A DNA stretch of 62,911 nt, the filler included, from Octopus bimaculoides (Eukaryota): assembly GCF_001194135.2 (NCBI RefSeq). It is 6 parts of 6 records of this genome, joined end to end, with 100 filler letters (N's around TTAATTAATTAA, not from the genome) between each part and the next. Parts side by side here need not be neighbours in the genome. Positions count along the whole stretch, not along the records: positions 1 to 28,642 come from NC_068994.1; 5 more parts are not named here. One strand, written 5' to 3'. The notes beneath the pieces are model-generated. The model was not told the origin of the DNA, did no database searches, and saw only the letters and a list, made by a program, of their open reading frames with translations. This document shows positions 17,482 through 17,924 of the stretch, piece after piece. The position numbers and the translations under genes were made by a program. Position 1 is the first letter of the stretch, and each line of letters starts with the position of its first letter.

Positions 17482-17924
17482 ACGTAAAGACCTCGGCAGA
17501 ATTTGAACTCGGAACGTAAAGATCTCGACGGAATTTGAAATCAGAACGATAAGACGTCGGCAGAATTTGAACTCAGAACGTAAAGACCTCGGCGGAATTT
17601 GAAATCAGAACGTAAAGACCTCGGCGGAATTTGAAATCAGAACGTAAAGATCTCGACGGAATTTGAAATCAGAACGTAAAGACCTCGGCAGAATTTGAAC
17701 TCAGAACGTAAAGGCCTCGGCAGAATTTGAAATCAGAACGTAAAGGCCTCGGCAGAATTTGAAATCAGAACGTAAAGACCTCGGCGGAATTTGAACTCAG
17801 AACGTAAAGACCTCGGCGGAATTTGAAATCAGAACGTAAAGACCTCGGCGGAATTTGAACTCAGAACGTAAAGACCTCGGCGGAATTTGAACTCAGAACG
17901 TAAAGACCTCGGCGGAATTTGAAC
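17482..17924 (-). repeat. 32-bp minisatellite, 13 full + 1 partial copies, derived from the SINE-A B-box region
   Basis: Plus-strand unit ACGTAAAGACCTCGGCGGAATTTGAA(C/A)TCAGA. Its reverse complement TTTACGTTCTGAGTTCAAATTCCGCCGAGGTC matches SINE-A at ~1834-1863. Units were counted at exact 32-bp spacing from 17482. Confidence 0.95.

What the first reader, a model, noticed from the sequence alone, without database searches (positions are those of the whole stretch)
17482..17924. Tandem array of ~14 Pol III B-boxes amplified from a SINE
Seen: 13.8 copies of a 32-bp unit equal to the SINE-A segment TTTACGTTCTGAGTTCAAATTCCGCCGAGGTC. The unit is centred on the B-box (GTTCAAATTCC; about half the units carry the GATTTCAAATTCC variant) and has no A-box. 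The SINE has GTC at both ends of this segment, a likely slippage microhomology. Known: B-boxes alone bind TFIIIC (ETC/COC sites) and can act as insulators or chromatin organisers; 32 bp is about three helical turns, so the sites are roughly phased. Inference: a SINE-born multivalent TFIIIC platform or VNTR that could act as a boundary element.
Basis: partly seen in the sequence, partly recalled or inferred. Interest (0 to 1): 0.7.

Follow-up and report, generated by a model that had tools for sequence, protein, structure and literature searches.

The report
SINE-derived 32-bp minisatellite in octopus
A 443-base tandem array in an octopus genome was made by repeatedly copying a 32-base piece of a common jumping element (a SINE); this is a known, ordinary way for minisatellites to arise, and nothing in the sequence shows that it acts as a protein-binding chromatin boundary.

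Summary
Tandem Repeats Finder reports 13.8 copies of a 32-bp unit at 17482-17924, with 92% matches and no indels. The consensus unit equals positions 63-94 of a tRNA-derived SINE that is abundant in this window and in Octopus vulgaris. There are 14 B-box-like motifs: 7 GTTCAAATTCC and 7 TTTCAAATTCC.

The slippage story holds. One SINE subfamily carries GTC on both sides of the segment. Units share blocks of variants, which indicates local duplication inside the array.

The array lies in a rearranged SINE copy. A head remnant with two A-box-like motifs sits directly upstream. An inverted SINE body fragment abuts the other end.

The TFIIIC-platform or boundary idea is untested. The sequence leans against it:
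- No unit matches canonical B-box patterns.
- Half the units carry G-to-T at the position corresponding to invariant tRNA G53.
- I found no TFIIIC data for cephalopods.

Close precedents exist. Snake SINE-derived satellites have units that include box B, and Alu-derived minisatellites are flanked by short direct repeats.

Verdict: a new member of a known kind, most likely a neutral minisatellite, of low interest. I could not test whether it is a single locus or a dispersed family, because no cephalopod genome database was available.

The parts
17482..17924 (-). 32-bp tandem array. It has one 20-nt leading partial unit, 13 full units and a 7-nt trailing stub. The unit is TTTACGTTCTGAGTTCAAATTCCGCCGAGGTC, equal to SINE-A positions 63-94. 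It carries 14 B-box-like motifs (7 G-type, 7 T-type).
   Evidence: TRF; unit register and variants; motif positions; mapping to the SINE
17952..17969 (-). 5' end of the parent SINE-A copy. GGCAGCAAGATGGCAGAA aligns to SINE positions 1-18 (15/18). It starts right after the A-rich 3' end of the neighbouring SINE copy.
   Evidence: Local alignment, 5 of 500 shuffles reach the score; sequence
17920..17961 (-). Two copies of GATGGCAG(A/T)ATGTGTTCA (17944-17961 and 17920-17937), separated by TCTCTA. Each carries an A-box-like TGGCAG(A/T)ATG. The second copy runs straight into the first B-box-like motif, so SINE positions about 26-74 are missing.
   Evidence: Sequence; motif scan; the A-box-like TGGCAGAATGG of the SINE copy at 24831
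17419..17481 (+). SINE-A body fragment (positions 95-151, about 77% identical, 5-nt insertion) in the opposite orientation to the array. It abuts the array's last stub tail-to-tail and creates an 11-bp inverted repeat (CCGAGGTCTTT / AAAGACCTCGG).
   Evidence: Local alignment score 51, 0 of 500 shuffles reach it; hairpin-like pairing seen; sequence
17455..17458 (-). First run of four T on the SINE-sense strand downstream of the SINE head. The array itself contains none.
17998..18155 (-). Neighbouring, older SINE-A copy (82% identical to consensus) of the GTC...GTC subfamily. Its tail continues to about 17970.
1768..1998 (+). It belongs to the subfamily without the upstream GTC.
24666..24831 (-). 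SINE-A copy of the GTC...GTC subfamily (85% identical to consensus).
24939..25043 (-). Old, partial SINE-A copy (76% identical).

Best explanation
The array is a locus-specific minisatellite born from one copy of an abundant tRNA-derived octopus SINE.

How it most likely arose:
1. A 32-bp internal segment (SINE positions 63-94) includes the SINE's B-box-like promoter motif. In one SINE subfamily it is bounded by the direct repeat GTC...GTC.
2. That segment was duplicated once by microhomology-mediated slippage.
3. It was then expanded and reshuffled by replication slippage or unequal sister-chromatid exchange, to about 14 units.

The parent SINE copy has since been rearranged. Its head is joined directly to the first unit. 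Its body is inverted, or replaced by an older inverted copy.

The DNA most likely has no function. Its only 'activity' is copy-number instability.

Shown: the array, its SINE origin, the subfamily microhomology, variant blocks shared between units, and SINE remnants at both ends.

Inferred: the slippage or unequal-exchange mechanism, and neutrality.
For: - Array: period 32, 13.8 copies, no indels.
- The consensus unit equals the SINE-A consensus over 32/32 positions. Units hit SINE positions 60-94 at 92-100% identity.
- SINE-A is a dispersed family: 4 copies in this window and 5 in 20 kb of O. vulgaris chromosome OX597818.1.
- GTC flanks the segment on both sides in 4 of 8 aligned copies.
- The 22 differences from consensus fall into only 9 variant types, shared between units (6=7; 4=10=11; 9 resembles 13; 12 resembles 14). 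This is the signature of intra-array duplication. G13T is absent from all 8 dispersed copies.
- A SINE head remnant lies upstream in the same orientation.
- Half of the B-box-like motifs carry a mutation at a normally invariant position, as expected without constraint.
- Precedents: snake SINE-derived satellites have a 67-nt unit that includes box B, with alternating subvariants (PMC10702118). Alu-derived minisatellites are flanked by short direct repeats and expand in situ (PMC3389668, citing Jurka and Gentles 2006).
Against: - The array is not in the simple in-situ context (...CCGTC[unit]nGACTTTGCC...). Both ends are rearranged.
- The array consensus has no change from the SINE consensus in 32 positions, and almost all units keep all three CpGs. 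The abutting SINE remnants are only 77-83% identical, and dispersed copies 74-94%. If the array were as old as its flanks, 0 changes in 32 positions would be unlikely (0.8^32 is about 8e-4, my arithmetic). So the array is either young or homogenised, or constraint cannot be excluded.
- A 3-bp microhomology is weak evidence on its own.
- There are no population, orthologue or genome-wide data.
Confidence: 0.8

Rival explanations
1. The array is a multivalent TFIIIC-binding platform of B-box-only sites, like ETC or COC sites, and acts as a chromatin boundary or organiser.
For: - There are 14 B-box-like motifs at exact 32-bp spacing.
- TFIIIC tau-B binds B-boxes alone with nanomolar affinity, and ETC sites act as barriers or insulators (PMC12409998).
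- TFIIIC binds Alu SINEs (PMC7014570).
- The array consensus is undecayed relative to its flanks.
- The parent SINE family amplified massively, so its master copies must have recruited Pol III factors (inference).
Against: - No unit matches GWTCRANNCC, or GGTTCGANTCC at up to 2 mismatches.
- 7 of 14 units have G-to-T at the G53-equivalent position. From my own knowledge of tRNA-gene promoter mutagenesis, this is one of the invariant B-box positions.
- Tau-B almost encloses the B-box and contacts flanking DNA. Sites 32 bp apart would therefore crowd each other (inference).
- I found no TFIIIC data for cephalopods. One cephalopod 3D-genome paper reports CTCF-like motifs and contains no mention of TFIIIC.
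- Thousands of dispersed SINE-A copies carry the same motif, so the array adds little that is unique.
Confidence: 0.05
2. The array is one member of a dispersed, multi-locus SINE-derived satellite family, or the internal VNTR of a composite mobile element. It would then be comparable to squamate sSat loci or to SVA, rather than a one-off.
For: In squamates such loci are numerous, and particular SINE segments (including box B) recur as units (PMC10702118). The GTC...GTC subfamily is common, so the same duplication could recur.
Against: Only this array is found in the 28.6-kb window. None is found in 20 kb of O. vulgaris carrying 5 SINE-A copies. This sample is far too small to exclude the idea. 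Scans of the metagenome, prokaryote-genome and viral collections for the junction 18-mer gave only isolated chance matches or none. Those collections do not hold cephalopod genomes.
Confidence: 0.15
3. The rearranged SINE is still a Pol III unit. The A-box-like motifs at 17950-17959 and 17926-17935 would pair with B-box-like motifs 24-88 bp downstream. The whole array would be transcribed up to the first TTTT at 17455-17458, giving a transcript of about 510 nt.
For: - A-box-like motifs sit upstream, with several B-box-like motifs inside the 32-93 bp spacing range tolerated by TFIIIC.
- There is no T4 run inside the array.
Against: - Both boxes are imperfect: the A-box-like motif has 9 of 11 matches to TRGCNNAGTGG by eye, and the B-box fails the canonical patterns.
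- The head remnant is decayed (15/18).
- Most genomic SINE copies are silent (general knowledge).
- No expression data are available.
Confidence: 0.04
4. The array, or its copy number, is an assembly artefact of a short-read draft.
For: The window has 12 N gaps in 28.6 kb, mostly beside microsatellites. The five units at 17770-17924 are almost identical, so their number is poorly constrained.
Against: The array lies in a gap-free 4.1-kb stretch. Its units carry an aperiodic pattern of 9 variant types, which a collapsed or looped graph would not produce. It also has unique junctions on both sides.
Confidence: 0.07

Closest known systems
SINE-derived satellites of squamate reptiles (sSat; Vassetzky et al. 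2023, PMC10702118)
   Same: These are tandem arrays whose unit is an internal part of a tRNA-derived SINE. In snakes the unit covers the 3' part of the head, including promoter box B. The arrays show high unit similarity, locus-specific subvariants that alternate, and leading and trailing partial monomers.
   Different: - The units there are 67-140 nt, against 32 nt here.
- They are shown to be multi-locus families with up to hundreds of monomers; here only one locus of about 14 units is known.
- The host is a cephalopod, not a vertebrate.
- The flanking SINE context here is rearranged.
Alu-derived minisatellites and TE-derived tandem repeats in human (Jurka and Gentles 2006; Ahmed and Liang 2012, PMC3389668)
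   Same: A segment of a SINE bounded by short direct repeats is duplicated and then expanded in situ. Units in an array are each other's closest relatives. Arrays of 15 or more units occur, for example 17 x 52 bp from AluJo.
   Different: The direct repeats reported there are mostly 5-20 bp (mode 7); here the repeat is only 3 bp. The Alu source is 7SL-derived, while this SINE is tRNA-derived.
ETC (extra-TFIIIC) sites, and the B-box clusters of fission-yeast boundary elements (COC sites; the latter from my own knowledge of Noma et al. 2006)
   Same: They are B-box-type motifs without a full Pol III gene. In fission yeast several B-boxes cluster within one boundary element.
   Different: Those sites are defined by measured TFIIIC occupancy and carry canonical or extended B-boxes. 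Here occupancy is unknown, the motif fails canonical patterns, and half the copies are mutated at an invariant position.

Membership tests
SINE/TE-derived minisatellite | The repeat unit is a contiguous internal segment of a dispersed SINE | tested here: met
   The unit equals SINE-A positions 63-94, and units are 92-100% identical to it. SINE-A is dispersed in the window and in O. vulgaris.
SINE/TE-derived minisatellite | Head-to-tail array of at least 4 units with constant period | tested here: met
   TRF reports period 32, 13.8 copies and 0% indels.
SINE/TE-derived minisatellite | Units are each other's closest relatives (in-situ expansion) | tested here: met
   Nine variant types are shared among units. 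G13T occurs in 7 units and in none of 8 dispersed copies.
SINE/TE-derived minisatellite | Short direct repeat flanks the segment in the source element | tested here: met
   GTC lies on both sides in the CCGTCTTTACG subfamily (4 of 8 copies). It is only 3 bp, so this is weak.
SINE/TE-derived minisatellite | The array is embedded in the rest of the parent SINE | tested here: inconclusive
   A head remnant lies upstream in the same orientation (15/18; 5 of 500 shuffles reach the score). The body 95-151 is present but inverted (0 of 500). Positions 26-74 and above 151 are missing.
Dispersed SINE-derived satellite family (multi-locus) | Many independent loci with the same unit | not testable with these tools
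   No cephalopod genome collection was available. There is one locus in the window and none in 20 kb of O. vulgaris. Scans of other collections gave only chance 18-mer hits.
ETC/COC-type TFIIIC site (B-box insulator) | Canonical or extended B-box motif | tested here: not met
   No unit matches GWTCRANNCC, or GGTTCGANTCC at up to 2 mismatches, although other sites in the window do. The motif is GTTCAAATTCC, which has one extra T compared with GTTCAAATCC, and 7 of 14 units read TTTCAAATTCC.
ETC/COC-type TFIIIC site (B-box insulator) | TFIIIC occupancy without TFIIIB or Pol III | not testable with these tools
   This needs ChIP, CUT&RUN or EMSA. I found no cephalopod TFIIIC data.
ETC/COC-type TFIIIC site (B-box insulator) | Barrier or enhancer-blocking activity, or position at a domain boundary | not testable with these tools
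   This needs Hi-C or ATAC overlay, or a reporter assay.
Functional Pol III type 2 unit (active SINE) | A-box and B-box 30-90 bp apart, followed by a T-run terminator | tested here: inconclusive
   A-box-like motifs lie at 17950-17959 and 17926-17935. B-box-like motifs lie at suitable spacings. The first TTTT is at 17455-17458. Both boxes deviate from consensus. The SINE scores as no tRNA with ARAGORN or Rfam.

The most novel reading that the evidence does not exclude
The array is a naturally evolved multi-site TFIIIC landing pad in a cephalopod. The seven intact B-box-like units, kept close to the SINE consensus while the flanks decayed, would recruit TFIIIC with or without Pol III. They would form a heterochromatin barrier, loop anchor or domain boundary. 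This would be analogous to the B-box clusters of fission-yeast boundary elements, but built by minisatellite expansion of a SINE promoter.
Probability: 0.04. Interest if true: 0.65.

Novelty: new member of a known kind. Interest (0 to 1): 0.2.

Why it matters
As it stands, it matters little. It is one more example, apparently the first noted in a cephalopod, that SINE segments seed minisatellites. It extends what is documented for Alu in primates and for Squam SINEs in reptiles.

It could serve as a polymorphic marker. It also warns that repeat annotation of SINE-rich octopus genomes will contain SINE-derived tandem arrays.

It would matter more in two cases. One is if genome-wide scans showed a whole family of such arrays. 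The other is if TFIIIC or chromatin data showed occupancy. Minisatellite expansion would then be a route to creating multivalent architectural-protein sites.

Tried and rejected
1. tRNA or RNA-family identity of the SINE or array. ARAGORN found no tRNA. Rfam found nothing credible on the SINE or the array. The many miRNA 'hits' in the window are microsatellite artefacts below gathering scores.

2. Search for the array elsewhere. I scanned for the unit-junction 18-mer GAGGTCTTTACGTTCTGA.
- Metagenome contigs gave 11 hits and prokaryote genomes gave 10, all isolated matches of 18-30 bp with no array or SINE around them.
- Viral contigs gave none.
- These collections do not contain cephalopod genomes, so the result says nothing about dispersal in octopus.

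3. Independent assemblies of the same locus. Exact look-ups of three window ORFs (18390-18854, 2747-3205, 17919-18134) were not on record.

4. Using a protein search to find arrays. Rejected without running. Every frame of the array meets a stop at least once per 96 nt, and the only 31-codon open stretch has no start codon, so such arrays cannot appear as predicted proteins.

5. A second large protein search to harvest more octopus loci. Rejected as not cost-effective. About 200 kb of extra sequence could not exclude a family of even a thousand loci.

6. Hairpin-driven slippage. The array folded as single-stranded DNA is much less structured than shuffles (z = +6.6). Secondary structure is therefore not the driver.

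7. Literature. Sequence strings of the SINE or unit are in no held paper. I found no cephalopod satellite or minisatellite paper describing this repeat.

8. L024, a 370-kb ENA contig with a related LINE, has no SINE-A and is not octopus.

Full report
**Observation**

Tandem Repeats Finder reports one array at 17482-17924: period 32, 13.8 copies, 92% matches, no indels, score 732. It is by far the strongest non-microsatellite array in the window.

Read on the minus strand, which is the sense strand of the SINE, the consensus unit is TTTACGTTCTGAGTTCAAATTCCGCCGAGGTC. The array consists of a 20-nt leading partial unit, 13 full units and a 7-nt stub. A 27-nt core of the unit occurs 15 times in the window at up to 3 mismatches, against none in 100 shuffles. 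Thirteen of these are in the array and two are in dispersed SINE copies.

Fourteen B-box-like motifs sit at exactly 32-bp intervals. Seven read GTTCAAATTC and seven read TTTCAAATTC.

**Where the window comes from**

The window is a microsatellite-rich draft assembly with 12 runs of N. The array lies in a gap-free stretch, 16247-20366.

A LINE 3' fragment at 2298-3205 encodes a 152-aa ORF. Its best named relative is a hypothetical protein of Octopus vulgaris, at 75% identity. The O. vulgaris locus fetched through that protein (L012, chromosome OX597818.1) is not orthologous. It does carry five copies of the same SINE in 20 kb, at up to 90% identity.

The window is therefore from an octopod. I could not fix the species. 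No host protein-coding exon was recognised in the window.

**The source element**

'SINE-A' has a full-length copy at 1768-1998 (+). Further copies lie at 17998-18155 (-), 24666-24831 (-) and 24939-25043 (-). An alignment of eight copies from the window and from O. vulgaris gives a consensus. Positions 63-94 of that consensus equal the array's consensus unit at 32 of 32 positions.

Two subfamilies are visible just upstream of the segment:
- GCCG|TTACG, as in the copy at 1768.
- CCGTC|TTTACG, as in the copies at 18155 and 24831 and in two O. vulgaris copies.

Only the second subfamily has GTC on both sides of the 32-bp segment, and the unit junction (GAGGTC|TTTACG) is what that subfamily would give. 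It is subfamily-specific and only 3 bp long.

Neither ARAGORN nor the Rfam tRNA model recognises the SINE as a tRNA. Its tRNA origin and the labels 'A-box' and 'B-box' therefore rest on motif resemblance and position, not on a test.

**Anatomy of the locus on the SINE-sense (minus) strand**

1. An older SINE-A copy runs from 18155 to about 17970 and ends in an A-rich stretch.
2. Immediately after it, at 17969-17952, GGCAGCAAGATGGCAGAA aligns to SINE positions 1-18 (15/18; 5 of 500 shuffles reach the score). This is the 5' end of a second SINE-A copy in the same orientation as the array.
3. An 18-nt piece, GATGGCAG(A/T)ATGTGTTCA, is present twice (17961-17944 and 17937-17920). It carries the A-box-like TGGCAGAATG of the SINE head. 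The second copy runs directly into the first B-box-like motif, so SINE positions about 26-74 are missing.
4. The array follows.
5. After the last 7-nt stub, at 17481-17419, the sequence is a SINE-A body fragment (positions 95-151, about 77% identical, with a 5-nt insertion) in the opposite orientation (score 51; 0 of 500 shuffles reach it). The arrangement is tail-to-tail and creates an 11-bp inverted repeat.
6. Beyond that lie an A-rich stretch and an internally deleted remnant of a second SINE family.

The array therefore sits in a rearranged SINE copy inside a nest of SINE fragments. It is not in the clean context ...CCGTC[unit]nGACTTTGCC... that simple in-situ slippage would leave.

**How the array grew**

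The 22 differences from the consensus reduce to nine variant types, and most are shared by several units:
- G13T is in units 4, 6, 7, 9, 10, 11 and 13.
- C23T, a CpG transition, is in units 6, 7, 8, 12 and 14.
- C25T plus G30A is in units 9 and 13.
- T31C is in units 6 and 7.

Units 6 and 7 are identical, as are units 4, 10 and 11. Units 9 and 12 resemble units 13 and 14. This is the pattern expected from slippage or unequal exchange that duplicates single units and short blocks. G13T is absent from all eight dispersed copies, so it arose and spread within the array.

The single-stranded array is much less structured than shuffled controls (z = +6.6). Hairpins are therefore not the driver.

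**An unresolved point**

The array consensus shows no change from the SINE consensus, and nearly all units keep all three CpGs. The abutting SINE remnants are only 77-83% identical. Dispersed copies are 74-94% identical, and most have lost the ACG CpG. If the array were as old as its flanks, zero consensus changes in 32 positions would be unlikely (0.8^32 is about 8e-4, my arithmetic).

The simplest reading is that a young SINE-A copy landed among old fragments and expanded recently. Homogenisation or constraint cannot be excluded without orthologous loci.

**The functional claim**

The background is sound. TFIIIC's tau-B module binds the B-box with nanomolar affinity. ETC sites carry extended B-boxes without TFIIIB or Pol III, and they can act as barriers or insulators (PMC12409998). 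TFIIIC also binds Alu SINEs (PMC7014570).

The motif here is not canonical:
- No unit matches GWTCRANNCC.
- No unit matches GGTTCGANTCC even with two mismatches, while other sites in the window do, for example GAGTTCGAATCC at about 8530 and AGTTCAAATCC at 13606.
- Compared with the common GTTCAAATCC, the SINE motif has one extra T.
- Half of the units have G-to-T at the position equivalent to tRNA G53. From my own knowledge of tRNA-gene promoter mutagenesis, this is among the invariant B-box positions.

The spread of that variant to seven units is easier to reconcile with neutral turnover than with selection for 14 binding sites. According to the same review, tau-B nearly encloses the B-box and touches flanking DNA. 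Full occupancy of sites 32 bp apart is therefore doubtful (inference).

I found no TFIIIC data for cephalopods. A recent cephalopod 3D-genome study reports CTCF-like motifs at loop anchors and never mentions TFIIIC. The platform or boundary idea is thus neither tested nor favoured.

The two A-box-like motifs upstream lie 24-88 bp from several B-box-like motifs. This is within the 32-93 bp spacing range that TFIIIC tolerates. The array also has no TTTT until 17458-17455. Pol III read-through of the whole array is therefore conceivable, though unlikely given the decayed boxes.

**Comparison with what is known**

Tandem arrays made from SINE segments are documented.
- In snakes, the Squam3-derived satellite has a 67-nt unit covering the 3' part of the SINE head, including box B. 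Unit similarity is about 89%, and locus-specific subvariants alternate (PMC10702118).
- In human, thousands of tandem repeats derive from transposable elements. Alu-derived minisatellites flanked by short direct repeats were described by Jurka and Gentles (2006). Arrays of 15 or more units expand in situ (PMC3389668).

The present array meets the defining features of that class: it has an internal SINE segment as its unit, a constant period, units that are closest to each other, and a flanking direct repeat in the source. Only the embedding in an intact parent is inconclusive. It does not meet the one sequence criterion that I could test for ETC-type sites.

It is a new member of a known kind. 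I found no description of this repeat, or of SINE-derived minisatellites, in cephalopods.

**What could not be done**

No cephalopod genome collection is searchable here.
- Scans of metagenome, prokaryote and viral collections returned only chance 18-mer matches or nothing.
- Exact look-ups of window ORFs found no independent assembly.
- Protein-based searches cannot see the array, because every frame is closed at least once per 96 nt.

**Verdict**

The SINE and slippage origin is supported. The TFIIIC platform idea is unsupported speculation. The most likely reading is a neutral, possibly polymorphic minisatellite, with confidence about 0.8. Interest is 0.2.

Noticed in passing
window 21500-21890: A different tRNA-like SINE head lies on the minus strand, with the B-box-like GTTTCGATTCC at 21714-21724. 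It sits between a perfect telomere-type run TAACCCTAACCCTAA (21506-21520) and a degenerate (TAAACC)n array (21796-21884). This may be an element with telomere-like repeats at its ends, or an interstitial telomeric remnant.
   Followed up: no
window 17920-17961 (minus strand): An 18-nt direct duplication, GATGGCAG(A/T)ATGTGTTCA, with a 6-nt spacer. It carries the SINE's A-box-like motif twice, directly upstream of the 32-bp array. It is a second, smaller tandem event in the same SINE copy.
   Followed up: partly
window 17419-17497: Tail-to-tail junction between an inverted SINE-A body fragment and the array. It gives an 11-bp perfect inverted repeat (CCGAGGTCTTT / AAAGACCTCGG) about 50 bp apart. 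Inverted SINE pairs are known rearrangement hotspots, which may explain the scrambled context.
   Followed up: partly
window 2298-3205 (+); proteins P0002, P0005; locus L023: This is the 3' fragment of a LINE. Among its relatives is a 94-aa 'hypothetical protein, partial [Escherichia coli]' on a 563-bp contig (68% identity). That contig is probably octopus DNA contaminating a bacterial assembly. An ENA metagenome scaffold (L023, SAMN16869662) also carries this LINE (80.6%) plus a SINE-A tail, so it is octopus DNA too.
   Followed up: partly
window, whole (e.g. 6377-6447, 4331-4401, 3783-3855): About 180 Rfam matches to miRNA families (mir-297, mir-466, mir-3149 and others) at E-values down to 1e-10. 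All lie on AT/GT/ATAC microsatellites and are well below gathering scores. They are low-complexity artefacts, not miRNA genes.
   Followed up: yes
window 667-27507 (12 N runs): There are twelve assembly gaps of 117-855 N in 28.6 kb. Almost every one is bordered by a microsatellite. This is typical of a short-read draft, so repeat lengths throughout the window are unreliable.
   Followed up: yes
window 8480-8560 (+) and 13590-13620 (+): Canonical B-box motifs (GAGTTCGAATCC and AGTTCAAATCC) occur here. The first sits in what looks like the head of yet another tRNA-like SINE family. They contrast with the non-canonical motif of SINE-A.
   Followed up: no
window 7200-7730, 12340-12600, 17318-17400 (-): A second SINE family is present, with two adjacent copies at 7200-7730. 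An internally deleted remnant lies right next to the array locus and ends in a (CA)n run.
   Followed up: partly
window 14813-14906 and 18644-18746: A pure (GAC)16-17 run is followed directly by (GAT)15, next to a gap. A G-rich (TGGCGG)n/(GGC)n tract lies 700 bp from the array and gives a spurious 154-aa proline-rich ORF on the minus strand.
   Followed up: no
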